From Macrostomum hystrix (lineage: Eukaryota > Animalia > Platyhelminthes), in NCBI GenBank assembly GCA_950097015.1, contig CATNEN010000034.1, forward strand, positions 5,332,001-5,396,000: a stretch of DNA of 64,000 nt, read 5' to 3'. The notes under the pieces are model-generated. The model was given only the letters and a program-made list of their open reading frames with translations, was not told the origin of the DNA and ran no database searches. Position numbers and translations under genes: made by a program. Shown here one piece after another: positions 16,846 to 62,873 of this stretch; position 1 is the stretch's first letter; the number at the start of each line of letters is the position of its first letter.

Positions 16846-19800
16846 TTAAAACGACTCGCTCAGCATTCGGGCAGTGATTCGACTCTCCGCTTGAGCTTCG
16901 CGCAGTCTGTCTCGCAGCTTCTCCAGCGCCATAGCCAGTTCGGCTATTGGAGGCGGCGGTGGCGGCGGCGGCGGACGCCAGACAACTAATCGTTGAACAT
17001 TGTCGGATGGTTGTGCCGATGGCGGCGATTCACCCCGGCTCCACTGCTGATAGAAATCGTCCGGAAGGAAATCGTCAATGTCGAGCCGGACCAAGCCGGG
17101 ACAGCTAATAGTCTTAGCTGGGCCTGGCGCAGCTCTGGACCAATCAGAGGACGTCAGGCGGTCGGACAGGCGCCGATTGGCCAGCCGGGCAGCCAGCCGG
17201 GCCCAGGGGAACAGGCGGACAGGTCGGCCAGACGACATTGCTGCAGTGGCGCCTGCCAGAGGACAGGCTGGCGGGTAGGCAGACAGCAGCCATGCGATGG
17301 CCTCCTGGTTGAGACGCCAGGCTGATGTGACGCGCTCAGGCGGCTGTTGCGGAGCGTCCGGTAGGCGCAGCTCGGCGATTGCCGACGGCGACGCCAACGG
17401 GCCAAGCGCGACAATGCAGGCATTGTAGAACTGGACTAGGCAGCGAATCGGGGGCTGCGGCTGGCAGGCAGCATCGCATCGATTGGCCAGGTCGTCGACC
17501 GGACGAAAATAAGCATTCAATAGGAGAGATTCCACAACACTAGCTAGGCTGGGTGTATCGGGCGCGAGTCTTGACGCCGCTTGAGGCAGCGTAGGCTGAT
17601 TGAGCAGCCAGCGAAGGCCGAGCAGCAGGTCCCGATGCCAGATTGGGTTTGGTCGGCCGCCAAGCAGGCGAATACAGAATGAGGCCGTAGCAACATTCGC
17701 GGAATGACAGGCAAACACTAAAGTAGGCAGGTGCAGCAGAGACAGGCGTGCTTCAGAATGCAGCATCGACGCCTCTGCCAAGCAGTGAGTGGCGCCAGTA
17801 GCTTCGGCCGCTTCAGCAGAGTCGGCCACCAGGGACGAGGCCAGCTTTCGCCGTAGCCAATTAGCCGCAAACGCAGGACAGTTGGATGAAAGCAGCAGGA
17901 CCAGCCGACAGGCCTCCGGTAGGCGAACGGGCGTTAAGACAGCGGCGGCTGCAGCCAAGGCGGCAGCAGCGGCGGGTGTCGGATCGACGGCTGCGCGAGG
18001 CAGATGAGCAACGGATGTGTCGGGTGGCAGTCGGCCGTGAAGGCGATCCACCAGCTGGAAGGGATCGACTAACGGAGCGCAGGGCGCCATGTCGGATAGA
18101 CGGGCGCGCGAGGCGGCCTTAGCAACGGCCCGTCGGCGCCAGCTGTCCCAGATGACGGCTAGACGATGACGGCGATGTTCATACAGCAGGTTGGCGTCCA
18201 AAGTACGTCGGGTACGCAGCCGGGCTAGGTACTGGCGACAAGACAGCTCGGTCTCTTCAAATATCAAGGCGTCAAGAAGCACCGTGTCCAACGACTCAAT
18301 CAGACGATGGATGAGTACAGTTTCGCATTCTGATCGGACGCCTTCTCCGATGACGTCACTGATAATAGAATCGGTAGCGTTATTAATAGCGGTTTGATTT
18401 ACGCTGGATTCTGTCAAAAAGTCTGAGGCAATTTCGGCGCACAACTGCCGTGTGAGACTGTTGAAGGTTTCGGCGTAGGCGTCGGCCACAGCGCCGGAGA
18501 TGGCACGGACACTATCAATATAGTCGGTAACGACGCTACGAACGAGAGGCGGCAGCAAGCTGGAGATTAGCTCCTCGGCCAAATAATTAAATAGCCTGTC
18601 ATCAATGACGGGTGGCTCTGGTGCAGGAAGACGAGGTGGCTGCGATGGAAACAGTGACATCGATGCAGCTGAGACTGGCTGAGAAAACAAAGACTGACTA
18701 AAAGCACTCGCAGTGGCTGAGCTGGACTGAAACAGGCTCGACGCCGATGCTATGGTCGGCACTGATGTAGAAACAACAGTGAGCGGTGCCGTTGGCTGCT
18801 GAGGTATTCGCCGAGGCTGTGGCGGCGGCGGCGGCGGCGGCGATGGTGACGGTGACGCTGGCGGAGGTGTTGCTTCTCGAGAGACGGCCAGATCGCCGAT
18901 GTATCGTCCACGCTCGTCGAAACTAACCGACGGCTGCGGCAGGCGAAGCGGCGGCAGCTGGCCGCCCCAGAGGCATTCGCCAACTAAGCGACTGCCGCGC
19001 TTGCTTTCAACAACGCGCACCGCCCTGACCGAGCGCGACTCGGTCGGATGAAACGAGTTGGCCACGCTGCGATCTAGCCACACCGCAGGCTCTTCATCCT
19101 CGTTGCCGTCGTCGCATTCGAAGCCCATGAAGCGACAGAAGCTTGCCGCATCTTCGGCATCTTCAAAACCAAGCGGCAACCGGGCGAGAGGCAGACGAAG
19201 CCGACGAACGTTAGCGGGTGGCCGCAGGGCGTGGCTCATTGTCCTCAGGGCACCAATGCGGGCCTGGGTGAAGTAGCGCAATAGCAGGCAGGCGGTCAGG
19301 AAGTCGGCTTGATCAACGGAACGAAAGAATGCTACGTAGTTATTGCTGGACAGGGCGAAGAAGGCACGTAGAGCAAGGCGAACCTGGAGGAGTGGAAGAG
19401 ACGAGTGCTGGCGAGCTAAACGGATTTGAAAAATAAGTCTTAAATATATCAAATACCATTCAGACGGTCTAATGTGCCTTCCACAATGCAGCTTTTAAAG
19501 TAGTTTTAGAAGCGTTTTAGTCGTTAGAAAAGCTGCGAAACTGTTTAAGCTGTAAAACGGTTTAGTCGTTGGAAAAGCGTTTTACAAGTAATTGTTCGAA
19601 GAGTCTCAGGCGATGGAAAAGAGTTTCAGTCGTTTGAAAAGAGTTTCAGTCGTTGGAAAAGAGTTTGAGCCGTTGGAAAAGAGTTTGAGCCGTTGGAAAA
19701 GAGTTTCAGTCGTTGGAAAAGAGTTTAAGTCGTTGCAAAAGAGTTTGAGCCGTTGGAAAAGAGTTTAAGTCGTTGGAAAAGAGTTTGAGCCGTTGGAAAA

Positions 19801-22800
19801 GAGTTTCAGTCGTTGGAAAAGAGTTTAAGTCGTTGGAAAAGAGTTTGAGCCGTTGGAAAAGAGTTTCAGTCGTTGGAAAAGAGTTTAAGTCGTTGCAAAA
19901 GAGTTTGAGCCGTTGGAAAAGAGTTTCAGTCGTTGGAAAAGAGTTTAAGTCGTTGGAAAAGAGTTTCAGTCGTTTGAAAAGAGTTTTAAGTCGTTGGAAA
20001 AGAGTTTCAGTCGTTGGAAAAGAGTTTAAGTCGTTGCAAAAGAGTTTGAGCCGTTGGAAAAGAGTTTCAGTCGTTGGAAAAGAGTTTAAGTCGTTGCAAA
20101 AGAGTTTGAGCCGTTGGAAAAGAGTTTCAGTCGTTGCAAAAGAGTTTGAGCCGTTGGAAAAGAGTCTCAGTCGTTGGAAAAGAGTTTAAGTCGTTGCAAA
20201 AGAGTTTGAGCCGTTGGAAAAGAGTTTCAGTCGTTGGAAAAGAGTTTAAGTCGTTGCAAAAGAGTTTCAGTAGTTGGAAAAGAGTTTAAGTCGTTGCAAA
20301 AGAGTCTCAGTCGTTGGAAAAGAGTTTAAGTCGTTGCAAAAGAGTTTCAGTAGTTGGAAAAGAGTTTAAGTCGTTGCAAAAGAGTCTCAGTCGTTGGAAA
20401 AGAGTTTAAGTCGTTGCAAAAGAGTTTGAGCCGTTGGAAAAGAGTTTCAGTCGTTGGAAAAGCGTATTAGTCGTTGGAAAAGCGTATTAGTCGTTGGAAA
20501 AGCGTATTAGTCGTTGGAAAAGCGTATTAGTCGTTGGAAAAGCGTATTAGTCGTTGGAAAAGCGTATTAGTCGTTGGAAAAGCGTATTAGTCGTTGGAAA
20601 AGAGTTTCAGTCGTTTGAAAAGAGTTTAAGTCGTTGCAAAAGCGTATTAGTCGTTGGAAAAGAGGTTCAGTAGTTGAAAAAGCGTTTCAGTCGTTTTTAA
20701 ACAACCGCTAGAGTTTTTCGTTGAAAAAGCGTTTATGTCGTTCAAGAAGTGTTTGAGTTGTGTTTGAAGCATTTGAAACGCTACTAGTCATCACATCGTA
20801 TTGGTAATTAAAAACTACGACCAACGAGAGAAACTAATAGCGATGATAAACCCACCTGTGGCGAGGCACGAATCTCAGACGATAACTGATGCACCTCGTC
20901 TAACACATTAGGCTCATTGAGTTTCATAAGTATCATATAAGCGCGAAATTCACTTTCATTAGGACACTGGCCAGCTAAATCGCCATACAATTCTCGTAGC
21001 GTTTGCAGGCATTTTGTTAAGTTTTCATTGTTAATTTTCTCGTCGAACACATCGGCGGGCATGCCGACCATTCGGGCGCTAGCGTAGATATGAAATCTGG
21101 CGCAGCGTTCAACTAGCTCGGCTGCGCCAGGATTGCACAGTCGCTGCTGTGTCACCTCCTTGCGTATTGCGCGCGTTCGATCCCACAGAAACTCGTACCT
21201 GAAAATTGACATTTCGAATGCACGTAGATTAACAGCAGGAAGACCACAGGGGTGTTTAAATAGCCACATTTTTTATCTCTTTAAATATTCGACCAATAGC
21301 CATGAAAATCCAGAACATCCAGAATAAAAAATACATCGGCATCGTCGAGAGGAAAGAGGCGAGAGGAAAACATAGTGTGGATTTTCTACCGTTTACCCAC
21401 TTTGTAGTTGCTTGAAAAATTGATCCCTGCTAACAGGGTCAATGCACAACAAAAGAAACCATTTAATGTACTCTCGATAAAAACGATTTGATTCTACATA
21501 GTCTTAAGTCGTTTCAGAAGCGTTAAGTACTCCGATACGCCTCTAGAATGCAGCAAACACTTTTCGCAAGATGCTATGAAGGCTCTTTAAAGAGGCTCTT
21601 AAGTCGTTACATTAGTTATATAGTCTTTCGAGTCGCAATGACGAACTTCTATAGTGAATAGTGCATAGTTTTTCTCACCATTCCTGCCAGCGACCCTCTT
21701 GTTCGCCAATGTCGGCAATGCAAGTTGACAAATAGAGCATAGTCCTATTGAGGACAGGCAATGGGCGCAGCTCGTGCGGTAGCGGCGCTTCCTGATCTGC
21801 GGCCGATCGGGAGTACTCCTTCACTGCCCGTAAGTGGTCCATCACACCTGGCCGCCCGGCGGCTGACTCAAACGCGTGCACTCGATGTCGGTCTTCCCTC
21901 AAGTAGCGCTCCTTCTCCGGGCACATGTCCTGACAAGTGGCAGCGGCTGTAGAAGGGACCGCTGTTGAACTATACTTGCCCAGACGGGCTCGAAGCTGAC
22001 GCTCGACAGATTCTAAAACGCGAATGCGATCGGCGAGACTTTGCGATGCTGGCAGAGAAACTGAAGACACTGAGGAGCTAGTTGGTGCGGGCGCCGCAAT
22101 ATCAGCGTCACCACCGTTACCACCGGGTAGACGGCGCCTGAACGCTTCTATGCCGGGATACCGGGCGCGCATCCGGGCTGACGCCGCCGCAGTCATAGCC
22201 GCATCGGCTGCAGCCGAATTCGCGAAATGCAGAATCGCCTGCGATTTGGCGCGACTAGCATAGACTCGGGTGACGCCTTGGAATAGTCGACGAATCGGCT
22301 CGTCGGCCTTCAGATCGTCTGGAACATTGCGCAACACAATAGCCAAGCTTGCTGGCTGCTGCTGTTGAACTTTCTGAGCGTTATCTTCAATAGATTGGCG
22401 GCTAACTTTAATGCGCTGTCGCAAGTTGCCAACAAAATCAGACGGATCTTTGTCCCCATTTCCGCGGCTCTCATCCTCCACATCGCCACCGAATCTTTTT
22501 AAAGCTAGGCGACGCGGCTCGTTCTCGACAATGGGCCGCTCATCACTGGCACTATTCCCATCGCTCTCTTGTGTGCCTTCCTCATCGTCATCTTCATCAT
22601 TATTCTCCTCATTTTCATCTTCATTATCGTTATCCTCTCCATCATTATCAACATCTTCGCCATCTTCGGTTACAGATCTAGTGCTAGAACCCTCCTCTTC
22701 ATCGTTATCAGCTTCTTCGGCTAAATCATCATCGTTATCTTTCTGATCTTGACCAGCAGCTTCTTCATCATTTTCGGCTTCATTTGACGCCTCTAAATCT

Positions 22801-27281: not shown

Positions 27282-27685
27282 CTAGTTTCCCGCGTTAAAG
27301 TATTTTGAGTTTAAAAACAGAAAAAGCTAAGCAAAACAAGTCAGTCCATGGTAGTCAGCAGACACGTTACTATATTAAACGTCATAATAATGGGCAACCC
27401 AGTAGAGAAAGTTGCCGAAGGTCTTCTCCGGATAGAGGCGCCGCCAGAGGTACTTGCTAAGGTGCAACTCGAACAGGCCATCGCTAGTGCCATGCATGCG
27501 CCGGAACTTCGGAACAATAGGCCCAGGCCTAGTTCACGCAGGGTGACATTTAGGTCACATAGGTCAGCAGCAGGCAGTAAACCCAGGACAGGAATGATTG
27601 TTGTTGATGCTCTAGGCCGGCCTGCCTTGTCAGATGCTCTAAAATAAAAAAATTCTGGTCAGAATAATTTAACGCGGGAAACTAG
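27282..27685. mobile_element. Putative MITE, 404 bp
   Basis: Perfect 18-bp inverted repeat CTAGTTTCCCGCGTTAAA (27282-27299 / 27668-27685), imperfect to ~27 bp, around a GC-richer core; TSD ambiguous (TA possible). Confidence 0.65.
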
Positions 27686-28580: not shown

Positions 28581-29410
28581 GTGGTAACAGGACAATTCGG
28601 TAACAGACAATTCGTTAACAGACAGTTCAGTAACAGTGCCACAGGACAGTTCAGTAACATATCAAGGGACAGTTTGGTAACAATTGATTAAACTGGATTG
28701 GAAAGGTTTTTTGCGACATTATTTTATATTTAGTTCGGTAAAGTTACAAAGTAAAGTCAATAGCACTTTGAACCATATTTAGCTTTTCGAAATATGAGTA
28801 TTAGGTTGCATTTTGCATGTTACATATTTCACATTTGGGTGTCAAATAAAATATAAAACGTTAAAACTAAAAACTAAAACTGAAACTTGGAGTCAAGCAA
28901 CAAGTCAAGCGTCAAGTCAAAGACAAGTCAAAGAAAAACAAACATGTTACTTAGCAACAATGTACCGTGCTGCGGCCCGCAACATTCGATTTGCCGTTTT
29001 TGTCCCAGCCTGATACTCTGCCCAATACTGAAAGATCTTCGCCTCCTTTGACTGATGAGCGCGTCTCTGATAGTGGCAAAGTCTCTCCTGGGACACCAGC
29101 TTCGCCTGGAGAGAGGCCACCCTTGCCTCATTGAAAAGGAGCGCAGCTAGCTTGTAGAAGCCAAGGTTACCGCTTCGCACCCTCTGATTGAGTTGATTGT
29201 GATAACCTTCCGGGCCATTGTTGGTTCGAATGCTGCAGTTGAAAACGCTAACTTCGTTGAGCTGCCAGACATGACTGTGGATCCACGTGTTAGCCATGTA
29301 CTCACAGAGTGCACTAAGCTGCTCATTTTCTACTGCCTGTTGCAACTCCAAGAACTGAGCTTCCATGCGATTGCCAGGCAGAAAAGGGAGCGCCATTAAT
29401 TTTGTGGTTA
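28581..29410 (-). mobile_element. Mutator/MULE transposon remnant: C-terminal transposase fragment plus one repeat-rich end
   Basis: KLMALPFLP..YMANTW..VW..SVFN..RTNNGPEGYHNQLN (28947-29405) is a MULE C-terminal signature; tandem GGACA(A/G)TTC(G/A)GTAAC repeats at 28585-28685; other end not found. Confidence 0.8.
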
Positions 29411-30248
29411 TCGAAATAGAATTGCGGTAGAGCAGCACTCTTAACAGATAATAGTAAGACAAAACTCAATATTATTTGCGATGCGTTTCGGCTAAAACTA
29501 GCCATCTTCAGGCACTAACGAACAGAATTTTACTGAAGCATTATGTAGGCTAGATTTAATTTAATTCCAATTAATTAGTTCCAATTAATTAAAACAGAAA
29601 ATTCTCACTAAAAGTGAAAACTACATTTGAACGTACAGGTTGATTGATTAATAGTAATAAATTGTACTTTATGTACTTATTAATGCTTGTTTCTAATCAT
29701 GAACGGTTTTTGATGATTTTAATCTGCATACATTACAGTGTAACAGCCGCATGTAGTACAAACAACATACATTTTGCGCATATAAGCTATCAAATACGCG
29801 CAAAGCTTTCCAATGTACTATACATGCTTTTAAAACATACTAAACTTTTTAAGTTCGTAGAAAGTACTTATTAAAACTTAGAAAGCTAAGCATGTTGACA
29901 AAAATAAACAAGTCTTAGTAAGTTAGGCATAACTATAGCATAGCACTTATAAGACTTAGTAAGTATAGCCTGTTTTTTTCTGCTGGGCTTGCTTTGGTAC
30001 TATATTTTCTAGATAAGCCATTATTACCTTTTGTCTATAGTAAATACTTCCAGTATGTTTGTCATTTATTTGGTAATTGGCTTTTTAGTCATCTAATAAA
30101 ATATAATAATGTTTGATTTACTCGTATTAAGAGGCCCATGAGTATTACTTTACTTATTTTTTTCACAACTGCAGCAAGTTCATAAGAAATAATAAGTGAA
30201 ACAATCGTTGAAGATCTCAAGAAACACCAAACAAGCAATCCTCAAAGG

Positions 30249-33200
30249 ATGGAGATAACATCAGCTGACCATTTGGCCAGTGTTATCCACGAATTCTACA
30301 GCGGTGTCAATGCAGCTGTGAATGGACGCCTATTAGAGTCGTTTGAACAGCGGCCAGACAGTTGCGACCTCTGTCTGGCATTTTTGGAATCCGCTGGTGC
30401 CAGCTGCTCTGACTGGGTTCGCTATCACTGTCTGGGCGTGCTAGAGCGGCGATTGGCGGCGGCTGGCGCCGACAGGCGGCATCGGCTGGCTCAATTGCTA
30501 ATCGCTGCGTTTGGCGCGATGTCCGACCTGCAGTCGCCTGGTTTTCTTGTTAATAAAACGGCCAAGGTTGGTTGCTTAGCTAATCAACTGGATCCGCGGA
30601 TATTAAATGCTATATTTGTTTCTCTAGATTCTTAATCAAGTTAAAGTCAAAGAGTAAATTTACTCTTAAGAGAGCGTACTATTGAGTCCCTGAGTTTCAA
30701 TTCATTTCGACGTCACATTGGTTCCTCGGAGAACCAGCAAGGGGGATAGGAATTTTTGCGCATCTTCTGAAACAAGAATCAAGTCGCCAGCCCTTCAGAC
30801 CGTCGAGATATTTAACGGTTCTGGCCGAAGGTTGATTGTTTGAGAGACAAGTGAGGGTCCTGTGGATGAGCTTCGTCCCATATTGAGGCTTGATCAGCGT
30901 AATTGGAGAAATTTGCATCAGGGTGTCCATATTCGGCTGGTGCCACTTGTTGAAGGCCCAGCAGCTCCGTCTAGATAAATGTCCCGTGTGGCTATTTTGG
31001 TCCGGACTTAATGCAGGTCAAGTTCCGGATTTCGTCCTGTAGGAGATGGCAGTTCTGCATTGAAAATTCCGGACGAAAACCGGGGCAAGTGTTTAAAACC
31101 CGGACCAAAACTTGAGTAGAAAGCCACTTGGTCTGGAACTACCTTCCGTCACTGGTCCGGAATGTCATCCGGCGTGAATTCAAAAGAGGGCGGAATAATG
31201 TGGGCTGGATTTCCGGACAAAAGGATGGCCAAATGTATGCATTTGCCACTCGGTCGAAAGCCGGACTGATTTCCTGATCAAAAGCGGACGAACCTGTGAC
31301 GCGGGCAAGAGCCGGAACGATTTACGGATCAAATGCGGATGAATCCGCGACCCGGTCGAGAGCCGGAACGATTTCCGGGTCAAATGTGGTCATGCAAGGA
31401 TGTGATACTTTGAGTAATTTGTTGACTCAAAAAAAACGAATCTGTTGACTCAAACAATTTAACATGCCCATAGACACGAATTCTTTCATAGGAGAAGCGA
31501 GACTGGAGACTGGAGACACCTTTTTTTCATCCAATGCTACAGATGTAGTCTTTAGGTGTTGTCAAAACTCACGACACATTTTGCAGGCCTTGCGGGTCGC
31601 TGTTCGTATACTGTTCGTATATTTTTTAGTTAAAGAAGTCTATTTCATTGATCAATCAGTTCAACGTTGGAATCCAAATCTAAAGAGAACACAACTACCT
31701 TTAAACCAATTTTACTCCTCATTGCGTTCCTCTTCAAGGAAGCAAATCTTCCTTGCTTCCTTGCTTCATGTACAGGGTACATGAGTACTCTGTACTAATG
31801 TACCCTGTACCCCTATGATCAAGGAAGCGTGCTTACGTAGAGTTTCATTAAGTTTTTTCTCCCGCTGGAGATCGATGGCAAGCCCACGACACGAGGCGCA
31901 GCCGTGCGGCACTTCGGTTACCGGATTGTGGACGTTTGTCAGTTTCGATGCGGCTACAGCCTCGTTCTTGGTAGAGAAGCCTCCCTTGATGAGGGTGCCA
32001 GCGTACCTCTTCGCCTTACTCCGATTTGTCTTGGCCGTCACTATGAGCACCTGGCTGCCCACCGCTAGAGGCAGCGGTGAAGTCTTCGCTACGCCGACAA
32101 TGATTGCCGTGTCTAGCACTGACTGATCGGTGCACACGACTTCGGTACCGTTGTCGTATTGGGTGTATTGCAGCACGAAATACTCTGGAGTTGGTGCACT
32201 CTTCAGCCTACTGACTTCAGGCTCGCCTTCACTGCCGCCTTCAGCGGATTGCGGAGCACTGCTCTTTCTTTTCGCGGGCTGAGTGGCCACTGTTGCAGAC
32301 TCGCCGACGGTTGCGTCTGATGTGGCTACCTCGGAACTATCTAAAGTGCTAGTCGGATCATGTAACTCACGGGCAGCCGTAGTCTTAGCATCAGCACCTT
32401 GGTTTTTATTTTTATTTCGCCTCCCCGAAACCATTGGTCGCGATTTTAGATCGTGCTGGATCGCTGTAAGGGCGAGACGGATGCGATTCAGTTTGTTGTT
32501 CATTAATCAAAAAAAGGAAATTGAGCTTCTGCTTAAGAATGCTGTTTGGAGGGATCTCCCTTATACTTAATTAGCTATGTGATACAGGCTTATTTGAAAG
32601 TGTAGACGAGAAGTAGAAGTAAAGTATTAAAGACACAATATCCAGGTGCCATAAACCCCAAAACTATTTCATAGGACGGCGTGTCCTGCATATGCATTAT
32701 ACGTTTTATCTGATCAGATCTCGAGATAATAGTTCATGGGTCACCAATCGATCATGGAAGGGAGATAATGTCTACGACTGCAGGCTAATTTGACATTGTA
32801 GGCGAGAACAAAACATTTTTCCGCTGCAGCATAAGAGGGAAAAGCGGGAAATGGTCCATTGTCATTTTTTGGCCTTTTCAGACCCAAAAGCGCCATTCAA
32901 AGGTCGTCTACGTCGCTTGCCCACCTTCATGTGCGAATAGGGCGCCTCGGGCGGAGTGTCAGGCATAACGATTTTTTAGAAGTCGGGGTCATTGTTCACC
33001 TTCGGCAAGTTGCAACGGTGTCGGCCGTGCTCCTGCAGTCTCTGTATTTTAGACTCGGGAGATAGGTTGGAGAACCAACCCTCGCAGTCAGCGCAGGTGC
33101 GCGGCTCCAGCTCCTGCCGTTCCGCACGGCGGCGGACTGTGTGGACGAAGGCGTACGGCGGTTTTTTCCTGTCTGGAAGACGGTTAAAAGTCTCCCTCGT

Positions 33201-36200
33201 GACAAGGGCTGCGGCAGCTAGTGGCGACGATGGGCGACTCGACGCCGCAGGGAGACCTGTAGCGGGCACAGTGCCACGAGGATCCTCGCCCACATGCTGC
33301 GTCGATTGAGCTAGCGGCGACGATGGGTAAGTCCACCCTCCAAAAAGCTGCTCAGGGCCTTGTGTCTCAGAGCCCTCCTCGTCGTCGCTCAGCACGGCCT
33401 GACTGTCGGGCAGACGGCCCAAATATTCAGGGTCTCAGTCTCAGACCCCTCGTCGCTCCACTGGGTCAGTTCCGTCAGAAACGACGTGGGCATAAGGTCG
33501 TCGAGTAGGTGAGCCCAGTCTATTTGTTGATTGGAGGAGGCCTCCATAACTGCCGTCCAATGTTGCGCTGTAAATTTGTGAAAAGTGTTTCAATGTGTGA
33601 GTGAGTGAACCGAATAGTGAAGTGCATTGATGCATTCATGAAATAATGACAGAAGTGAATACACTTTAGATCGCTAATTTTCAACATCGAATGTTTTATT
33701 TATTTTTTATTTGACACACAGAGTCTAATGAAAGAGTCAGTTACATTTTAGCAATTGTACCATTACTACAGCAACTACTAGTAATACTGCTAATAATAAT
33801 TATTATATTTTTCAGTAACGGACAAACTCAAGCAGCAGAACAGCAAGTTTATAATAATTAAAAAGAGTAATTAAGATTCAACGTTGGAGAAACATGTACT
33901 TTATCACGTTGTCAGCGCTGGGTAACACGGGTCCTTCATAAAGCGGACACACTGCTCAAATCAAGGCCTCATAAACTCAAATGCCCAAACTCTACTAGTA
34001 CCTAGTCATTGAGTCCTTAAGTTCAAACTGAAAATTCTGAGTTCAAGCAAGTCGCACTGCCGGCAATGCCAAAAAATCATTATCTCGTACAGTATCGTTA
34101 TCATCCTCGCACAACCGCACCACGGAACCATTCGCAGTTTTATTGGAAACCCAGCTGTACATGCGGCAGCACAGCGATTTTAGTGCCCGACAATATGCAT
34201 GCGCCGACTACATCACAAGCCGGCACACGCATTGTCCGATCGAAATTCGTGCTGCTGTCGAAGGGGTCCGCTAGAAGAGATCGCACATGAGCGAAAGTAC
34301 AACCACGGTTCGCCGAAGTTGCAGGAACGGCGCACAGCGATTCCAGAGGGTCGACAAAGGCATCATGTACTGGCAGTACATGAAGCGTCAGCAGCACTTC
34401 TTGGCCCTCCTTGTCTATCGCGGCGACGCGGCCGAAAACAAAGGACCTGTCCTCGACAGACCTCCAAACAGCGACGAAGCAGCTGCACAACTTCAAAGCG
34501 GCGTAGTTTTTCGTCGGTCGGAACACCTCGATCGTCTGTCCAGACGGAATCGTGACTGCAGTCCAGCAATTCAAACTGTTTGTCGGGCGTCGTAAGACAA
34601 CTTCGCCACAAACTTCGGTTTCGAATTGCCTCCTGACACGCTGATCAGCGGCCAAATCACCGACCAGGAGACTCCGCATCTGGAGAGTCCCTAGCTCTCT
34701 CTCAACTGCTCCTACTAGTTCTACATCAGTTCGTCGAGTTCCATGCAAGCGATCTCGCAATTTCTGGTTTCTCAGCCCTGACTAGAAAGAGCTGGAAGAC
34801 GATGTACCGAACGATCCCGCAACACAACGCATGAAGATAGCACGATGGAGTGCCCCGCATAAAATCAAATCCGCAAAGTCGACTGCGACTGCGGATACGC
34901 GGACACTTCCGCGCACTCCAAGAGTGTCTGTGCGAAAGTCGCGTCCGTTAAGCGCATGATTGCGTGCCAAGGTGATGGTGTCGTGCATGCACCGGACTAC
35001 TGTCTGCTGACAGCCCAGTCACCTTGCAGCGTGCTGCATCGCCGGTGTCAATCCGACACTGTAGACTCGGCCATGACGAGACGGATGCAGGGCTGTTTTG
35101 ATGTAGCATTTTTCGCAACCGAAGGCCGCCGAAAATCGTCGCATGCACAAAACATCCGCCCGAGCTGGAGCGTCGAACATGGCTAAGATGGTGTGTACGC
35201 GCAGACGACGCCGCACGTTCGTGCTGTCGACGTACTCAACGCCTTCCAGGCGTAGTTCGTTGAGCCTGTCGACTAGTATGGGCAAGAACCCGGCCGGATG
35301 AAGCTTGATGACACTGCCGACACAGATGGCTACCTTCACAACGAATCTCAGCTTCACCCTATCTTGCAATTCGTTGATGCTCAGGTAAAGTGCGTAGACT
35401 TCAACGTTGCTCGTCGTGCGGACAGGGAATCCATCGCCGCAAATTGCGGCAGACAGGTCGCTGCGAGTAGCGGTGTCGATGCTGTCCAGGAAGTCTGCAT
35501 ACACTTCTCCGTTCCGCAGGTACAAGACGTCTGGATTAATTGGGGTATCAGCTGGGAACTTCACGTGCTCCAGCAAACCACGGGACTCAACTAGTATTTT
35601 CAGCTGCTTTCGAATGTCGAAGTGCCAGAAATTGCCTATTTTTGACGAGCCACAACTCAGACACCTGTCATCAGGTGAACGGCACTGCCGATCAAGAGTG
35701 TGTGCATGGCAGTCATTGCAAACAACTGCGCACGCAGTAGAACCCGCCGTAGATTGACAAGAATTCATTGCGTTGCGTGCTGTTCGGCCGCTTCTAGGCA
35801 AGCGGCAATTGGGAACGATGCGGTGCAGCATTGTCAGCATGCGCGTTAAGCCTCGGCGTGATAATTTAACGTCGTCAGCACATGACAGGACTTCGGCCAG
35901 AGCTTCCCCAACAGTCGCAGGGAGCGCCGGGTGCCACTGCAACTGCAACTTGTCTGTGGGTACGGGCAATTCGTCCTGCGAGCCGTCGTCGCTGGCCGAG
36001 TCGTCGTTGCCGGCGTCGTCCTGCGAGGGGTCGTTGCCGGCGTCGGCCTGCGAGCCGTCGTCGCTGGCCGAGTTGTCGCCTCCGGCGATATCCTGCGAGC
36101 CGTCAGCATTGACTGAGCAAGCAGTAAAGATGGGTGAAATATTGATTTAGCGTCATGAAGAAATATTCATAAAGTGTACTAAAGTGAACGTGTTCCACGC

Positions 36201-39200
36201 CTATGCATTTTTTCTGTTGTCACTAAAAAGATTCTGCAATGTTGACAAAACACTCACTTGAACCTGCTCCTTCTGGACGCTTCGAGCTTGACGGCTCATC
36301 CGCAGTCGATGCAACCGGATCCAACCTCCGCTTTCGCGCCTGCATGTACCGGCGCATGTAGACTTTGCGGCGGCTTTTCGCCTGCTCGTCCATTTTGCCA
36401 CGGAGAGGGCAGCTGGAAAAAGTGAAACAACTTTACAGTACATGAATTTAAGACGCCGTTCGATCATCCGCCGGCATTCATCGGTATCGTGACGGCATTC
36501 ATCATGTTATATACTAACTCATTTTTTCAGCAATTGCTACGAAAATTGGAAGAGGGAGGACGCTGAAGCATCGGGAATGTATTTAATGATAATAGGCGCA
36601 CTTACTTTTCTCTACCTAGCGAAGGGAATGGATAATGTTTAAGAAACCGAAAGAATGCAAAATGTCATAAAGTCGTTATTAAGTACCGGAATTGTATTTT
36701 ATTTCCAGTTTTAAGTGATTAAGTGACTGCAATGACTGCAATGAATACCATGACTACAAGAACAAGCGGTGACAAAAAAAACAGAACGGCACAATAATAA
36801 CAAAGACAAACATGACGAATCATATACTCATAAGCAATTTATAGTATAGTCCGATTCGTACGCCGCGTTTGATCCGACCAACTGTGGGATATAATACCGG
36901 GTTATTAACCGGATAAAATTCCGGGCGAAGAGATACGCCTACCCGGATTTCACCCGTTTTTTCCTATTTTCACCCGCTTCGGCTCAGGAAAGAAAGAGGT
37001 CAAAATTTCGGCTAAAAACCGGATCAAATTAAGTCCAATTACCATTCTTCATCCGAGTTTCGCCCGGTTTATAAGCCGATTTTCCGCCCGGAAAGCAACT
37101 CCGGATGAAAACCGGGTGAAACCGCTTTTCATCCGGAAAATGACACTTCGGATTAAAATCGGACCAAATTCGGCTAAAAAGGCCACACGGGGTGCGTCAC
37201 TAACGAAGTCAGAGATAATGCGGGCACATTTGGGTGACCTGCTGATAGAGTTTGAAGGCCTGACAAGGCCGCACTGAGGCGCAGTGCAGCTTCGTGTATA
37301 GGGGTATGAAATACACTTGTTCTTAGGGTAAAAACCAGACCTTCTGGGAGAACCATGAATATGTCGACGGTCTGAAGGGCTGGCGACTTGATTCTTGTTT
37401 CATAAGGTGCGCAACAAACAGGTGGCCTGTGTCCTTGAGTTTCGTGTGCTTGCGTTGCTCCGATCGGCTGCAGTTAAAATATTTTTCGGGGAGCGGGAAT
37501 GTCTCTGCCGAAAAACGGGCGGCAAAATGGCTTGGTTGTCACTTTATCCAAGACTATATCCTCAGCTTAAAACATTTTTATGGGTGAGAACAATATCCAT
37601 TGTATTAAAATTTTGTCCATAAAATTTAACAAAAGCGTATTCGCCTTCTCCACGCAGGTTTTCGCCGATCTAAGCCGCATGGACGGTCGGGATCATCTTG
37701 CCGGCGTTCTACTGGACGCTGCCCAGTCGTTGCTGCGCAATCCAAACGATGGCAACTCGGGCTCGAGTCTCCGCTGCGCCTCCGCGCTATTGCAGGTTGC
37801 GCTAGACGAGCGACCAGATCGACTGGCTGAGCGCCTCCAGGCGCTGACGCCGCAGCTGTGCCAGGCCCTGGCTGCCAGGTTGAAGCCGCCACCGGTGCAA
37901 CTGCCGGAACTGCTGCTTGACCAGGTTTGTATCATATTTTGCATTGTGATCGAATGCTTCTACCTTCTTTAAGCCAAACTATAAAATCCCATTGGCTCCC
38001 TCCAACCAGGTGACACCAGAATCGGTGCAGGCGGTGCGCAGTCTGCAGGGCGGCCTGATCGCTCAGCCTACAGACTGCGAAGCTGCCGCAGCTTGCGCTC
38101 GCCTATTGTCCTCGCTGGCCGCTTCGCCACTGTGCTGGTGCTTAGAGGCCGCCTCGCCTGCCGCATCCGATCTGCTATTTTACCTGGCTCTGCACGCCGC
38201 CTCGCCTGCCGATCCGGAGCGTCAGTTGGCCGAACTGGCGTGGTCGACTGCGGCCGGCCTGCTGCAGCCTGGCGGCCAGCGGCCACTCAGTCCTGCCTTC
38301 TTATCCAGCGTCCGACGGCGCTCATTAGCCGGCCTGGCTCACCTGTGCCAGGTGCCGGGCGCCGAGGATAGGCTAGGCCCAGCCCTGGACTGTCTCAGGC
38401 CAATGCTAGCCGATTTGGGCGCACAGGATGAACAGCAGCGCGTATTGGCGCTTCACCTGCTGAGTCGGCTAACTGCGGATGCTAGCAATTGCGATCTGCT
38501 TTGCCAGTGTCTGGAGCTCTGGCTCGGCCTGGCCGACTGTCTGGCTAATGTTGCCGAATCTAAAGCCTTTCAGGTACCAAATAATTACTAATCGATTGAT
38601 AGATAAATGTCCATGGACTGGGGCTGCCCCTATCGGAATTAAAATTTTTCAAAAACGATAACGACGAAAAACGAAGACCCGGAAAATTTGTTAACTGATA
38701 CCAACAGTGAGGGGCGGCCAAACTCACCCAAAATTCTACTGATGCTCTGCTAAAATTTATACTCAAACCCCTGTTTGACCTCTCAGGCCGGTTGCAAGCG
38801 GCGTTTCAATCGCTACCTTTTCGACTCAAACACTTCTCTAACTGTATTCAAGGTCTCAAAAGCTACTCTATAACAGGCAAATATATTGGGATAGTTATCC
38901 CCATCGGTTGATTGTCCCTGAATTCTAAGTTTAATTTCTCTAACAATAGTTGCAGCTTCTGAGCTGCTATATATTTAAGAATGGCTAGCAAGTATCTATC
39001 ATTTGTTTTACTCTCCAAAGCATCCGGAAGGTCTCAACTCAATGCGCGCCGCCCTACTAGAAGCAACTGGCGCAGCCTATTGGAAGAGCCAATTTCGAGC
39101 CAATCAGAGCTTCTTAGATGGCTTAGACGATTGTGGAGAGGATAGCGAGATGCAGCAGCTGTTGAGGCTCACCTGCGACCTATTGCATCTTGTGGCACAG

Positions 39201-42200
39201 CTGCAGCCTGAGCAGGTGACTATTGTGCTCTAATGTACCACTCGTAGAAAAATCATAAATCTGCTATGGTTTATGCACTACTTTAATCTGGTAAATTGGT
39301 CATTCGGTAATTCTCAGATCATTATTTAGATAGCTCATAATCATACTCAGCTCATTCAGTTATTTTCTGGTTAGTCATACATATCCAGCTCACATGGGTT
39401 TGGTCATGTCCACAGCCATGTCATTTGGGTTGGTCTATTCATGTCGTTTATATTAATCATATCCACGTCATTTAGATAGATGATATCCATGTCATTTGGT
39501 TTGGTCACATCAATGTCATTTGGTTTGGTCACATCAATGTAATTTAGGTTGGTCATATCAATGTAATTTGGGTTGGTCATATCAATGTCATTTGGTTTGG
39601 TCATATCAATGTAATTTAGGTTGGTCATATCAATGTAATTTGGGTTGGTCATATCAATGTCATTTGGTTTGGTCATATCAATGTCATTTGGGTTGATCAT
39701 ATCAATGTCATTTGGGTTGGTCATATCAATGTCATTTGGGTTGGTCATATCAATGTCATTTGGGTTGGTCATATCAATGTAATTAATTAGGTTAGTCATC
39801 AATGTCATTTGGGTTGGTCATACCAATGTCATTTGGGTTGGTCATATCAATGTCATTTGGGTTGGTTATATCAATGTCATTTGGGTTGGTCATATCAATG
39901 TAATTTACGTTGGTCATATCAATTTCATTTGGGTTGGTCATATCCAGTTTACTCTGTTTGATCATATCCCGGGTTTTTGAAATAGTCATATCCTGGTTAT
40001 TTGAAATAGTCATATCCTGGTTATGTGAATTAGTCATATCCTGGTTATTTGAATTAGTCATATCCTGGTTATTTGAAATAGTCATATCCTGGTTATTTGA
40101 AATAGTCATATCCTGGTTATTTGAATTAGTCATATCCTGGTTATTTGAATTAGTCATATCCTGGTTATTTGAATTAGTCATATCCTGGTTATTTGAATTA
40201 GTCATATCCTGGTTATTTGAATTAGTCATATTCTGGTTATTTGAATTAGTCATATCCTGGTTATGTGAATTAGTCATATCCTGGTTATTTGAATTAGTCA
40301 TATCCTGGTTATTTGAATTAGTCATATCCTGGTTATTTGAATTAGTCATATTCTGGTTATTTGAATTAGTCATATCCTGGTTATGTGAATTAGTCATATC
40401 CTGGTTATGTGAATTAGTCATATCCTGGTTATTTGAATTAGTCATATTCTGGTTATTTGAATTAGTCATATCCTGGTTATTTGAAATAGTCATATCCTGG
40501 TGTTTTGAAATAGTCATATCCTGGTTATTTGAATTAGTCATATCCTGGTTATTTGAATTAGTCATATCCTGGTTATTTGAATTAGTCATATCCTGGTTAT
40601 TTGAATTAGTCATATCCTGGTTATTTGAATTAGTCATATCCTGGTTATTTGAATTAGTCATATTCTGGTTATTTGAATTAGTCATATTCTGGTTATTTGA
40701 ATTAGTCATATCCTGGTTATTTGAATTAGTCATATTCTGGTTATTTGATTTAGTCATATTCTGGGTATTTAAATTGGTCATGTTCAGGTCATCTAGACCA
40801 TATTTCAATAGTCACCGTCAAATGAGTGACTTGCCCCCTTCTCATTGTTCAGGTCGGCAGTCTGATAGCGGGCGAGCTGGCTGCCACCCTGCAGGCCTAT
40901 CATCAGCAGCTGGGCGAAGGCGCCCAAGTTCGCGAGCACAACCTGCAGAAGCTGCACTGCGCCCTGCGCGACCTGCGCTCAAACCTGGCCTACCTGCGTC
41001 AGCTGCCCTATCCTCCAGCTGGCCTGGCTAATCTGCTACTGGCTGCTGCTGAGCGCGGCGCCCGGCCGGCCGAATCGGCGGCCGCCTGGCCGGCTATCGC
41101 AGCCGCTCTGGCCGACGCTCAGTGCGGCCTGCTGCTTGGCTTGGCCACTTGCCAGCCGGAGGATCCGGCGCCAGCTCTCGCTGTGGCTGTGGGCTGTCTG
41201 CTGTCAGCGGGTGGCGGTGACAGCGCAGCGTCGCAGCAGCTTCACAGTGAGTGACCATTACTAAATGCAACGCTTCGATTTGCCTAACTCCGGTGCAATC
41301 CAGGTCATTAAGGTTGGTCATATGGTTGATCATATCCAGGTCATTTGGGTTGGTCATATTGGTTGATCATATCCAGGTCATTTGGGTTGGTCATATTGGT
41401 TGATCATATCTAGTTCATTTGGGTTGATCATATCTAGTTCATTTGGGTTGAACACTGTTAGGTGAATTTGAGCCCCTAACCCCGGACTCACGGTTTTCAA
41501 CGAGTCGCATCACCGCTTCGTCGACTCTTTTATGTATTTTGCAATGCTTGCTACTGTCAGTAGACTAAACGATGATTATTGTCTCTCCCGCAGTGTCGCC
41601 TCGTCTCCGCCTATGCGCAGCTGAACTGATCGCTGCTATACTGGCTCGCCGACCAGATCTGGCCAGCTCAGTTCAGCTGTCGGGTCTATTCGCTGAATTC
41701 GCTCGCCCCGATGTCGCAGACGGCGGCCTAGCCGGGATGCCGGACGATGCGCGCGCCAGATTATTGTCGGCGTTGGCCGCCGCCATCGACTCCGAGCAGG
41801 CTTTGTCTGGCCTGTTGGATTCAACGGTGAGTCTTTGCTTCTTCTAAACTCCTCTTCCACTTTTCTGCCTCTTCTAATTCTACTTCTGCTAGGCCTAGGG
41901 GATTGAGTGGCACTCCTGCACTTATTAATCTTACTTTCTTTGACTGGTTGTCCACTTTTGTTTACATTGACAACGAATTTTAGCCTTTTTTATGTTAATA
42001 TTTCAACGATAATATTATTTTGATTGAATTGAAGATTGCCGCACTGACCGAGTGTTCCGTCGCTAACGCCGCCGGCGACGAGGCCATTGTTCGCAGTCGA
42101 CGCTGCGCCCTGGACAGCCTGGCCGCGGTGTGCGACTCAGTTGGCGAGGCGCCCGTGAAAGTGCGGGCGGCCAACTTTGCCAGACTACGCGACCTGCCAT

Positions 42201-51509: not shown

Positions 51510-52155
51510 TGTACCAGGCTTCATTCTACCCCAGGCTTCCTTCTACCCCTTCTACCCCAGGCTTCCTTCTACCCCTTCTACCCCAGGCTTCCTTCTACCC
51601 CAGGCTTCTTCTACCCTATGCTTCATTCTACCCCAGGCATCCTTCTACCCCAGGCTTCCTTCTACCCCTAGCATCCTTCTACCCAAGCCTCTTTCTACCC
51701 AAGCCTCTTTCTACCCCAGGCTTCCTTCTACCCCAGGCTTCCTTCTACCGCTAGCATCCTTCTACCCAAGCCTCTTTCTACCCAAGCCTCTTTCTACCCA
51801 AGCCTCTTTCTACCCCAGGCTTCCTTCTACCCCAGGCTTCATTCTACCCCAGGCTTCATTCTACCCCAGGCTTCATTCTACCCCAGGCTTCATTCTACCC
51901 CAGGCTTCATTCTACCCCAGGCTTCATTCTACCCCAGGCTTCCTTCTACCCCAGGCTTCATTCTACCCCAGGCTTCCTTCTACCCCAGGCTTCCTTCTAC
52001 CCCAGGCTTCATTCTACCCCAGGCTTCATTCTACCCCAGGCTTCATTCTACCCCAGGCTTCCTTCTACCCCAGGCTTCATTCTACCCCAGGCTTCCTTCT
52101 ACCCCAGGCTTCATTCTACCCCAGGCTTCATTCTACCCCAGGCTTCCTTCTACTC
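51510..52155. repeat. 17-bp minisatellite CTACCCCAGGCTTC(C/A)TT, array 1
   Basis: Tandem array. Confidence 0.96.
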
Positions 52156-52271
52156 TAGTTTTTTTATGAATTCTGAAAACTTTTAGTCAGGATTAGCTTG
52201 AAAAAAATTTTAAATCGTTCTTACACAAAAAAACTTTTCATATTTCTTTTTCGCACAGAATTCCTTAGCAA

Positions 52272-58865: not shown

Positions 58866-59284
58866 AGAATCTAGCAGAATTGTGATTGAGTTTACGGGCG
58901 CCGAAAAGTCATAAAAGTTGTTGCTTTCCAAGATGTTAAGAAGCGGTATATAAAAAATCCGAACTGCCAGGAGCTTTCAATCAAACACTGACAATCGATC
59001 ATTCCATACAAATAAGTAAATATTAAATATAAATTTTTTTCCAGAAGCACAAATAAAAAACCTGTCAGTTTAACTGCATGACACATCTGTATCCGCGATT
59101 CCTGTATGCAAAATAAATGACAAAATATTAGCTTTGATAGATTCAAACGTGACTGCTCGAAATTGACAGTTGCATGTCGACTTGAAAGACTCTGAATTGC
59201 TACCAGTACTTTAAGTTATAATTTACCGTCTGCTATGTTATTCATTGAAGATGCTATCGTGCTATTCATGCATTCATTCAAACA

Positions 59285-62830: not shown

Positions 62831-62873
62831 AGGGGATATTAATTCGTTGGAAACGTGAATGTGCAGCACTTAC

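What the first reader, a model, noticed from the sequence alone, without database searches (positions are those of the whole stretch)
32862..33547. CACTA/EnSpm transposon carrying a stand-alone CtIP/Sae2 C-terminal domain gene
Seen: between the TIRs/TSD of a 6.2-kb EnSpm-type element, in the same orientation as the transposase, is a gene with the CtIP/Sae2 C-terminal signature (V-R-R..ER..L..TCADC..GRHR..F[W]..P.T). It lacks the N-terminal coiled-coil of host CtIP; instead it has an acidic/disordered leader and a C-terminal KRRRR NLS-like tail. Established: this domain stimulates the MRN/MRX endonuclease, and Sae2-MRX is needed to process hairpin-capped and blocked DNA ends; hAT and RAG/Transib transposases leave hairpins on donor DNA, and CACTA excision footprints fit the same model. 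Inference: the element family may encode its own resection cofactor, or a dominant-negative decoy, to steer repair of its excision site (e.g. towards HR that restores the donor copy). I know of no described transposon with this cargo. This copy is decayed.
Basis: partly seen in the sequence, partly recalled or inferred. Interest (0 to 1): 0.9.

Follow-up and report, generated by a model that had tools for sequence, protein, structure and literature searches.

The report
Transposon copy carrying a CtIP tail
A decayed copy of a cut-and-paste transposon in a flatworm-like genome carries, next to its transposase, a small gene made from the tail of the host DNA-break-processing factor CtIP; no paper found reports such cargo, but whether it helps the element is untested.

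Summary
On the minus strand at 32862-33547 lies a broken gene of about 229 codons, with one frameshift and one in-frame stop. Its C-terminal part is a genuine CtIP/Sae2 domain: phmmer E=6e-11 against 1.84 billion proteins, and 73.8 bits against a profile of 64 homologues (best of 2000 shuffles: 8.9).

It sits between a decayed Transposase_21-type transposase and a third ORF, all co-oriented, inside a 6,209-bp element (30983-37191). The element has 10-bp inverted ends (CCCGTGTGGC) and a 2-bp GT target duplication. These are the "CCC-core" animal relatives of CACTA, not CACTA proper. Other copies of the very abundant short repeat it landed in read straight across the site, which proves the insertion.

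The domain's nearest relative is the host CtIP of the flatworm Macrostomum lignano (52% identity in the core). The gene corresponds to that protein's last ~175 residues, without its coiled coil. The KRRRR tail and the missing CDK site are inherited from that lineage.

At least one collinear sister copy exists in the same genome. This scan had already found the same cargo on several other pieces of this genome.

Function is inferred only (a module that docks on the MRN complex). My selection test was not significant, and this copy is dead.

The parts
30983..37191 (-). Whole transposon copy (6,209 bp). Its genes are on the minus strand, antisense to the host gene whose intron it sits in.
   Evidence: Inverted ends were aligned. 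Empty-site evidence: other copies of the surrounding repeat continue after 30979 with a sequence that matches window 37191 onward at 25/30, the only such match in the window.
30983..30992 (.). Left terminal inverted repeat CCCGTGTGGC, preceded by the target-site duplication GT (30981-30982).
   Evidence: The CCC core and 2-bp duplication match the animal Transposase_21 elements described in PMC1636069.
37182..37191 (.). Right terminal inverted repeat GCCACACGGG, followed by the target-site duplication GT (37192-37193).
30993..31400 (.). Left subterminal array of short CCGGA-core repeats, the presumed protein-binding sites.
   Evidence: All 7 TCCGGA sites of the element lie within about 230 bp of the left end or about 90 bp of the right end. 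None lies in the interior.
36850..37181 (.). Right subterminal array of CCGGA/AACCGG-core repeats.
34143..36146 (-). Transposase remnant in three stop-separated stretches: 35022-36146, 34785-35018, 34143-34781. AATAAA follows its stop.
   Evidence: frames. Pfam Transposase_21 is weak: E=0.017, 14.8 bits against a cut-off of 28.6. The protein-atlas feature search puts tnp2 clusters first: score 0.96, 202 of 256 features shared.
32862..33547 (-). CtIP-tail gene, about 229 codons, broken here.
33392..33547 (-). Leader with its ATG (MEASSNQQIDW...), containing the first DEGSET motif. It is out of frame with the domain in this copy.
   Evidence: A sister copy has 4 extra bases at 33437-33449 that put leader and domain in one frame. 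DEGSET matches M. lignano CtIP 6/6.
32979..33434 (-). Main open stretch: a second DDEEGSET motif, a disordered linker, and the CtIP/Sae2 C-terminal core (FNRLP, VRRRAER, CADCE, GRHR, DPDF).
32976..32978 (-). In-frame TAA stop at the position of the conserved W (F in the nearest relative) of the FW motif.
32865..32975 (-). Tail after the stop (IVMPDTPP...MKVGKRRRRPL...). It is homologous to the end of CtIP relatives.
   Evidence: tblastn of the tail against the M. lignano locus: 50% over 36 aa. Adding the tail raises the phmmer score to P0002 from 55.7 to 82.9 bits.
31769..32503 (-). Third ORF: 245 aa, intact, unassigned. It is missing from a sister copy.
   Evidence: No Pfam hit. Weak BEN lead only, 0.73. 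Structure model poor, pLDDT 41. Joint 31102->32414 seen in DNA and RNA contigs.
30753..30982 (.). Left half of the very abundant short inverted-repeat element (MITE-like) into which the transposon inserted.
   Evidence: Depth is 75,000-89,000 against about 69 for unique flank in the DNA run. Its ~100-nt arm pairs with 37314-37417.
37192..37417 (.). Right half of the same MITE-like repeat.

Best explanation
What it is (shown):
- A dead copy of an animal Transposase_21 (CMC superfamily, 'CCC-core') cut-and-paste transposon. It inserted, antisense, into a copy of a very abundant short repeat inside a host intron.
- Its minus strand carries three co-oriented genes: transposase, a CtIP-tail gene, and an unassigned third ORF.
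- The CtIP-tail gene derives from the last ~175 residues of a Macrostomum-type flatworm CtIP. It keeps an acidic DEGSET (Ser-x-Thr) motif, now duplicated, plus the CxxC and RHR motifs, the FW-PDTP stretch and the KRRRRPL tail. It lacks the N-terminal coiled coil that makes CtIP a tetramer, and has gained a short leader of its own.
- In this copy the gene is killed by a frameshift between leader and domain and by a stop in the FW motif. The transposase is also broken.

How it most likely works in intact family members (inferred, about 35-40%):
- The small protein docks on the host MRE11-RAD50-NBS1 complex through the same contacts as CtIP.
- Brought to transposase-made breaks, it biases how those ends are clipped and repaired. 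One example is resection of the emptied donor site, so that the sister chromatid restores the element.

Other readings: about 25% that it acts the opposite way, as a monomeric competitor that blocks resection. About 30% that it is a tolerated passenger.
For: Domain identity.

Insertion and ends. They match the CCC core and 2-bp duplication of animal Transposase_21 elements (PMC1636069).

Transposase type.

Origin from a flatworm CtIP:
- The tree places the window's domain with M. lignano P0002/P0013 (support 98/88), then with P0001 (100/97).
- P0002 and P0013 lie in the same host neighbourhood in two contigs (acetyl-CoA synthetase - gene - EMP24).
- P0013 has an N-terminal coiled-coil-like segment. 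They are therefore the host gene.
- Identity is 52% over the 60-aa core. DEGSET is shared 6/6.

More than one copy:
- Depth is 125-300 over 32400-36199 against 69-75 for unique DNA.
- Variant contigs run along the whole CtIP and transposase stretch.
- The joint 31102->32414 ties the same left end to the CtIP region in a sister copy.
- The sister copy's 4-base difference joins leader and domain in one frame.

Plausibility of docking on MRN:
- pSer-x-pThr motifs of Ctp1 and pSer-Glu-pThr271 of CtIP bind the Nbs1 FHA domain (PMC8079451).
Against: - No functional data exist.
- This copy is broken.
- Test on the transposon branch: it keeps 18 of 23 ancestral residues at conserved columns and 11 of 20 at variable ones, p=0.19. 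It matches only 12 of 20 strongly conserved columns, against 15-16 for its two nearest relatives.
- Human CtIP 790-897 alone supports no single-strand annealing in cells (PMC7261161), so a tail without the oligomerisation domain may be a poor activator.
- The T847/S267-type Thr-Pro site, needed for activation in yeast and human, is absent (Asn-Asp). It is also absent from the nearest host CtIP (Gln-Ala).
- RNA contigs over the gene are short, unspliced, of low depth (2-8 against 12.8 for the host exon), and cover non-coding parts too. The element lies in a transcribed intron.
- No transposase was found beside short SAE2-domain genes in the other genomes sampled.
Confidence: 0.8

Rival explanations
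1. Passenger. The tail exon of the host CtIP was picked up once by an ancestor of this transposon family and has been carried along without benefit to the element. The motifs survive only because the capture is not old enough, or because of residual constraint unrelated to transposition.
For: The gene matches only the last part of the host gene, as in gene-fragment captures. This copy and the sister copies carry different disabling changes: a frameshift and stop here, -1 at 33538 and -5 at 32985 elsewhere. The constraint test is not significant. A sister copy has lost the third ORF, so the internal content is fluid.
Against: At about 45-52% identity to the nearest host protein, neutral drift should have erased the reading frame and motifs. 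Instead the frame is open for 152 codons, and all 8 columns invariant in alignment A1 are kept. The gene has a leader and ATG of its own, and a duplicated DEGSET motif. Earlier notes of this scan report intact copies elsewhere in the genome; I did not check these.
Confidence: 0.3
2. Decoy. Lacking the tetramerisation domain, the protein occupies CtIP's docking sites on MRN and blocks resection. This would protect the excised element's ends or push donor-site repair towards end joining.
For: There is no coiled coil, unlike host P0013. CtIP 790-897 alone is inactive in cells (PMC7261161). The Sae2 C-terminal fragment still binds Rad50 (PMC6167383). No T847-type site is present.
Against: The nearest host CtIP also lacks the T847-type site, so its absence says nothing about loss of activity. 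The Sae2 C-terminal fragment keeps residual activating capacity. Nothing has been measured.
Confidence: 0.25
3. Not transposon cargo at all. On this reading the ORF is the host's own CtIP last exon, or a pseudogene of it, lying by chance between transposon remnants.
For: Its closest relative is a host CtIP.
Against: The ORF lies inside one insertion with perfect inverted ends, a target duplication and a demonstrated empty site. It is co-oriented with the transposase and 596 bp downstream of it. A sister copy shows the same arrangement. No upstream CtIP exons or coiled coil are present.
Confidence: 0.02

Closest known systems
CtIP/RBBP8 - Sae2 - Ctp1 (C-terminal domain, Pfam PF08573), nearest member Macrostomum lignano PAA88737.1/PAA54340.1
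   Same: The C-terminal core with FNRLP, VRxRxER, CxxC-E, RHR, F(W) and P(D)TP motifs, the RRRRPL tail, and an upstream acidic DEGSET motif. It groups with the flatworm protein in the tree (98/88).
   Different: Only the last ~175 residues are represented. There is no N-terminal coiled coil or tetramerisation domain. It has its own ~30-residue leader and a duplicated acidic motif. It is encoded inside a transposon and broken in this copy. Identity is 45% over 112 columns.
Animal 'TRC' elements with a Transposase_21 domain (SmTRC1 of Schistosoma mansoni and relatives; CMC superfamily), PMC1636069
   Same: Transposase_21-type transposase, short inverted ends beginning CCC, a 2-bp target duplication, several products from one element, and a flatworm-type host.
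   Different: No CtIP-derived gene is reported for those elements. Here there are separate co-oriented ORFs rather than documented alternative splicing.
Plant En/Spm (CACTA) with TnpA and TnpD
   Same: The same transposase superfamily, subterminal arrays of short binding-site repeats, and more than one element-encoded protein.
   Different: The ends are CCCGT, not CACTA. The duplication is 2 bp, not 3 bp. The second gene is a DNA-repair-factor fragment, not TnpA.
DNA transposons that carry captured host genes. Fungal elements with TET/JBP dioxygenase come from PMC12730594 (title and abstract only). Helitrons with RPA, Academ with an XPG-like nuclease, and CACTA/MULE with ULP1 protease are from my own knowledge.
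   Same: A host-derived accessory gene is kept within the ends of a cut-and-paste element family.
   Different: The cargo here is the MRN-activating tail of CtIP, which none of the papers found reports.

Membership tests
CtIP/Sae2/Ctp1 C-terminal domain (PF08573) | Pfam SAE2 model above its gathering score | tested here: inconclusive
   The uninterrupted piece scores 15.3 bits against 19.8 and matches only model positions 1-31, because the stop splits the domain. I did not run a read-through against Pfam itself.
CtIP/Sae2/Ctp1 C-terminal domain (PF08573) | Significant similarity to proteins that themselves pass the Pfam threshold | tested here: met
   phmmer E=6.3e-11 to P0001 and 7e-10 to P0002. 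Eight of 10 hits scanned carry SAE2 at 25.7-42.2 bits. A profile of 64 homologues gives 73.8 bits, against at most 8.9 for shuffles.
CtIP/Sae2/Ctp1 C-terminal domain (PF08573) | CxxC and RHR motifs | tested here: met
   C-A-D-C-E and G-R-H-R are present. Columns R41, C49, C52, E53, R73, H74, R75 and F87 are invariant in alignment A1, which includes the window.
CtIP/Sae2/Ctp1 C-terminal domain (PF08573) | CDK Thr/Ser-Pro site equivalent to human T847 / yeast S267 | tested here: not met
   Asn-Asp stands at the aligned Thr-Pro. The nearest host CtIP (P0002/P0013) has Gln-Ala there, while P0001 keeps Thr-Pro. The equation with human T847 rests on my knowledge and on PMC6167383.
Full-length CtIP/Sae2 protein | N-terminal coiled coil / tetramerisation domain | tested here: not met
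   There is no such segment in the leader or upstream frames. Host P0013 and P0001 have one.
Full-length CtIP/Sae2 protein | Stimulates the MRN/MRX endonuclease | not testable with these tools
   Needs biochemistry.
CMC superfamily, animal Transposase_21 ('TRC', CCC-core) elements | Transposase_21 (PF02992) transposase | tested here: inconclusive
   Pfam E=0.017, 14.8 bits against a cut-off of 28.6, matching 71 of 213 positions. The protein-atlas feature search puts tnp2 clusters first: 0.96, 202 of 256 features. Sequence searches were blank. The gene is decayed.
CMC superfamily, animal Transposase_21 ('TRC', CCC-core) elements | Inverted ends starting CCC, with a 2-bp target-site duplication | tested here: met
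   CCCGTGTGGC/GCCACACGGG flanked by GT/GT. The empty site is shown by other copies of the surrounding repeat. The criteria come from PMC1636069.
CACTA/En-Spm in the strict sense | CACTA terminal motif and 3-bp duplication | tested here: not met
   The ends read CCCGT. A 3-bp duplication would need one mismatch and an offset of the ends.
One-off gene-fragment capture (Pack-type) | Fragment confined to one copy and near-identical to the host exon | tested here: not met
   A collinear sister copy and about 2-4x depth exist. Core identity to the nearest host CtIP available is 52%. The window genome's own CtIP could not be fetched, so the second half is only indirectly tested.

The most novel reading that the evidence does not exclude
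A family of cut-and-paste transposons encodes its own docking module for the MRE11-RAD50-NBS1 complex. The module is a tetramerisation-less CtIP tail with a duplicated Ser-x-Thr motif. It would act at the element's own breaks to steer end clipping and repair-pathway choice. This would be the first transposon-encoded DNA-end-resection factor.
Probability: 0.35. Interest if true: 0.85.

Novelty: new variant of a known kind. Interest (0 to 1): 0.62.

Why it matters
Cut-and-paste transposons depend on host repair of the breaks they make. Copy-number gain depends on whether the emptied donor site is repaired from the sister chromatid. An element that carries the part of CtIP that switches on MRN would show that a transposon can manipulate pathway choice directly.

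It would also supply a natural minimal CtIP (tail plus Ser-x-Thr motif, no coiled coil, no T847-type switch). That would help dissect how CtIP activates MRN. If it works, it could serve as a compact tool to bias repair at programmed breaks.

This copy adds three things to the scan's earlier sightings:
- exact ends, with empty-site proof of insertion;
- placement of the element among the CCC-core animal elements;
- identification of the donor gene type, a Macrostomum-type host CtIP, together with what was and was not inherited from it.

Tried and rejected
- **Word-indexed protein searches.** Both the CtIP ORF and the 375-aa transposase piece gave nothing. The tool has a length window and needs shared words, so I do not count these as absence.
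- **Solved structures.** No hit for the ORF.
- **Same linkage in other genomes.** I looked at contigs around P0001, P0002, P0003, P0008, P0011, P0013, P0017, P0023 and P0064. Where DNA was held, tblastn with my transposase pieces and ORF3 and Pfam on neighbouring ORFs found no Transposase_21. One thrips locus has a DUF7869 gene nearby, which I did not follow up. The linkage is therefore so far seen only in this genome.
- **Organism identity.** I tested whether the window is M. lignano itself by searching the abundant short repeat and the element against the two M. lignano loci. There was no match, which is not decisive.
- **Constraint on the transposon branch.** The test was not significant.
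- **dN/dS between copies.** Not possible. The reads tool lists only part of the variants and no other copy's sequence could be fetched.
- **ORF3.** No Pfam family, a weak BEN lead (0.73), and an unusable single-sequence model (pLDDT 41), so I ran no fold search.
- **The 60-100-nt outer inverted repeat (30753-30853 / 37314-37417).** I first took it for the element's ends. I rejected this because its depth is about 1,200 times that of unique DNA, and other copies of it run across the insertion site.
- **A 3-bp duplication (TGT/GGT).** Considered and judged less parsimonious than GT/GT with perfect ends.

Full report
**1. The observation**

- From the ATG at 33547, one frame reads MEASSNQQIDWAHLLDDLMPTSFLTELTQWSDEGSETETLNIW and then runs into a stop.
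- A second frame is open from 33434 to 32979. It reads ...LSDDEEGSETQGPEQLF...FNRLPDRKKPPYAFVHTVRRRAERQELEPRTCADCEGWFSNLSPESKIQRLQEHGRHRCNLPKVNNDPDF.
- A TAA follows at 32976-32978. The same frame then continues with IVMPDTPPEAPYSHMKVGKRRRRPLNGAFGSEKAKK to the stop at 32862-32864.
- So the gene has about 229 codons and is broken twice in this copy.

**2. Is the domain real?**

- Pfam SAE2 on the uninterrupted 148-aa piece is below threshold: E=0.042, 15.3 bits against 19.8, model positions 1-31 only. The stop cuts the domain.
- The exhaustive HMMER search of 1.84 billion representative proteins gave 12 hits at E<1e-3. The best were P0001 (6.3e-11) and P0002 (7.1e-10).
- Eight of the ten hits I scanned carry SAE2 above Pfam's own cut-off. 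Among those named by their sources are RBBP8 of a spider and a thrips and the CtIP-type proteins of Lingula, a chiton, a gastropod and Ciona.
- In a multiple alignment the read-through (X at the stop) shows every motif of the family. The stop stands exactly at the W (F in the nearest relative) of the FW motif.
- A profile built from 64 homologues without the window scores the read-through at 73.8 bits. The best of 2000 shuffles scores 8.9.
- Adding the tail behind the stop raises the score to P0002 from 55.7 to 82.9 bits, so the tail is homologous too.
- The protein-atlas feature search independently puts SAE2 clusters first (0.91, 204 of 256 features shared).

**3. The element**

- A 60-nt inverted repeat (30753-30812 / 37358-37417) extends to about 100 nt. 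I first took it for the ends.
- Laying contigs of a DNA run of the same organism on 30200-36199 shows otherwise. Depth at 30600-30999 is 75,000-89,000, against 69 for the unique host exon beside it. This is a copy of a hugely abundant short inverted-repeat element.
- Contigs from other copies of that repeat leave the window at 30979 and continue with GGTGCGTGACCACCGAAGTCGG... This matches the window at 37191 onward at 25 of 30 positions, the only such match in 64 kb. That is an empty-site comparison.
- Everything from 30983 to 37191 (6,209 bp) is therefore an insertion.
- Its ends are a perfect 10-bp inverted repeat, CCCGTGTGGC / GCCACACGGG, flanked by GT on both sides.
- All seven TCCGGA sites of the element lie in the subterminal few hundred bases and none in the 5.3-kb interior.
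- A CCC core and a 2-bp duplication are what DeMarco et al. described for animal Transposase_21 elements (SmTRC1 of Schistosoma, and elements of Tribolium and Aedes; PMC1636069).
- The element is therefore a CMC-superfamily relative of CACTA, not CACTA in the strict sense.

**4. The other genes**

- On the same strand, upstream, lies a transposase remnant in three stop-separated stretches: 35022-36146, 34785-35018 and 34143-34781.
  - Its Pfam Transposase_21 match is weak (E=0.017).
  - The protein-atlas feature search points clearly to tnp2 clusters (0.96).
  - AATAAA follows its stop.
- Downstream lies an intact 245-aa ORF (32503-31769), which I could not assign. It has no Pfam family, a weak BEN lead and an unusable model.
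- The element sits in an intron of a plus-strand host gene. Transcript contigs of three runs leave the window at about 30567-30569, where a GT follows. In those runs the repeat-to-exon depth ratio is about 20, against about 1,200 in the DNA run, so they behave as RNA.

**5. Where the gene came from**

- In a tree of 51 domain sequences the window's protein is sister to the two Macrostomum lignano proteins P0002/P0013 (support 98/88). P0001, from a metagenome, is next (100/97).
- P0002 and P0013 lie in the same neighbourhood in two contigs (acetyl-CoA synthetase - gene - EMP24). P0013 starts with a coiled-coil-like segment. They are the flatworm's host CtIP.
- Identity is 52% over the 60-residue core and 45% over 112 columns.
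- The acidic motif DEGSET upstream of the domain is shared 6/6 and occurs twice in the transposon gene.
- The homologous part lies within the host gene's last exon, whose start maps to about 20-35 residues before DEGSET.
- The transposon gene is therefore the C-terminal ~175 residues of a Macrostomum-type CtIP, with a short leader of its own and without the oligomerisation domain.
  - The RRRRPL tail is present in P0001, P0002, P0006 and P0010.
  - The Thr-Pro that corresponds to human T847 is missing in the transposon protein (Asn-Asp) and also in the M. lignano host protein (Gln-Ala). P0001 keeps it.
- All three of these proteins have Thr-Pro a few residues later (PDTP/PPTP).

**6. One copy or a family?**

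- In the DNA run the stretch 31039-32471 has single-copy depth (74.6, no differences).
- The stretch 32400-36199 has depth 125-300, with contigs that differ at a few positions per hundred. That is roughly two to four copies at 80% identity or more.
- A joint 31102->32414 (depth 83, also seen in two RNA runs) links the same left subterminal region directly to the DNA just downstream of the CtIP gene. A collinear sister copy therefore has the CtIP and transposase parts but lacks ORF3.
- That sister copy has four extra bases at 33437-33449. Applying the listed variants makes the leader and the domain one continuous frame (...TELTQCSDDEGSETQGPEYLGRLPDSQ...). It also has lost one base at 33538, which separates the ATG from that frame.
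- Another copy lacks five bases at 32985.
- The copies are therefore disabled in different ways, which points to an intact ancestor gene that included the leader. I built no consensus.
- This scan had already noted the same cargo on other pieces of this genome: 16 notes, five of them followed up, some reporting intact and transcribed copies. I treat those as leads. My own data confirm only multi-copy status and collinearity.

**7. Selection and expression**

- Selection:
  - I took columns where the host protein and P0001 agree. The transposon protein keeps the ancestral residue at 18 of 23 conserved columns and 11 of 20 variable ones (odds ratio 2.9, p=0.19). This is suggestive but not significant.
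  - It matches 12 of 20 strongly conserved columns, against 15-16 for its two nearest relatives.
- RNA contigs cover the gene at depth 2-8, against 12.8 for the host exon. They are short and unspliced, cover non-coding parts too, and some come from the sister copy. This shows RNA, not a defined messenger. Intron RNA of the host gene is an alternative.

**8. How it may work**

- Shown elsewhere:
  - The monomeric C-terminal part of Sae2 is the minimal unit that promotes the MRX endonuclease, and it binds Rad50 when phosphorylated (PMC6167383).
  - Human CtIP 790-897 alone supports no single-strand annealing in cells (PMC7261161).
  - pSer-x-pThr motifs of Ctp1, and pSer-Glu-pThr271 of CtIP, bind the Nbs1 FHA domain (PMC8079451).
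- Inferred here:
  - The transposon protein keeps both kinds of contact with MRN, namely the C-terminal core and a duplicated acidic Ser-Glu-Thr motif. It has lost self-association.
  - The most economical reading is a module that docks on MRN.
- I put about 35-40% on a helper that brings or activates MRN at transposase-made breaks. I put about 25% on a competitor that blocks resection, and about 30% on a passenger.

**9. Novelty**

- Full-text searches found no report of a transposon-borne CtIP/Sae2 domain. The searches combined CtIP, SAE2 or PF08573 with transposon, transposase, EnSpm and CACTA.
- Short stand-alone SAE2-domain proteins exist in other genomes and in marine metagenomes. In the places I sampled, none lies beside a Transposase_21 gene.
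- I class this as a new variant of a known kind: a DNA transposon with a captured host gene. This particular copy is dead.

Noticed in passing
window 30753-30982 and 37192-37417: A copy of an extremely abundant short element (about 456 bp, with ~100-nt inverted arms). Its summed depth in the DNA run is about 1,100-1,300 times that of unique DNA. It is also well represented in the RNA runs (depth 190-320 against 12.8 for a host exon).
   Followed up: partly
window 31103-32413: A sister copy of the transposon lacks these 1,311 bases, which hold most of the intact third ORF, and has AA in their place. The joint is seen in DNA and in two RNA runs.
   Followed up: partly
window 33340-33460 (minus strand): Tandem duplication of the acidic motif (SDEGSETE... 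/ SDDEEGSETQGPE...) in the leader of the CtIP-tail gene. The single DEGSET of the M. lignano CtIP matches it 6/6. It looks like a CK2-type Ser-x-Thr motif of the kind that binds the Nbs1 FHA domain.
   Followed up: partly
window 35971-36099: Two 57-nt direct repeats (86% alike) encode an acidic DDGSQ/DAGND-rich stretch at the N-terminal side of the transposase remnant.
   Followed up: no
window 28947-29462 (minus strand): A 171-aa ORF (…NGPEGYHNQLNQR…) about 1.5 kb left of the element looks like a fragment of another transposase-like gene. It has no Pfam family at E<=1.
   Followed up: no
window 4745-7932, 19599-20695, 39418-40781, 51514-55307, 57925-58868, 60847-62839: The window is dense in long minisatellite arrays (periods 16-44, up to 125 copies) with strong strand asymmetry in G/C. 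Similar arrays fill the introns of the M. lignano CtIP locus L001.
   Followed up: no
L007-L010 (TARA ocean metagenome scaffolds); protein P0064: A 209-aa stand-alone SAE2-domain protein whose 90%-identity cluster holds 87 member sequences; four of its contigs were read, all short, gene-dense marine scaffolds. The protein atlas lists a similar ~190-aa cluster partly assigned to giant viruses (Nucleocytoviricota). CtIP tails may have been taken up by other mobile genomes.
   Followed up: no
L005 (Frankliniella occidentalis), proteins P0012, P0023, P0033: The thrips genome has several short 'RBBP8-like' paralogues (95-259 aa) that form a long-branched clade of their own. One lies about 5 kb from a DUF7869 gene.
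   Followed up: no
window 27282-27685: A small foldback: 27-nt inverted arms (93% complementary) 350 nt apart. It may be another miniature element.
   Followed up: no
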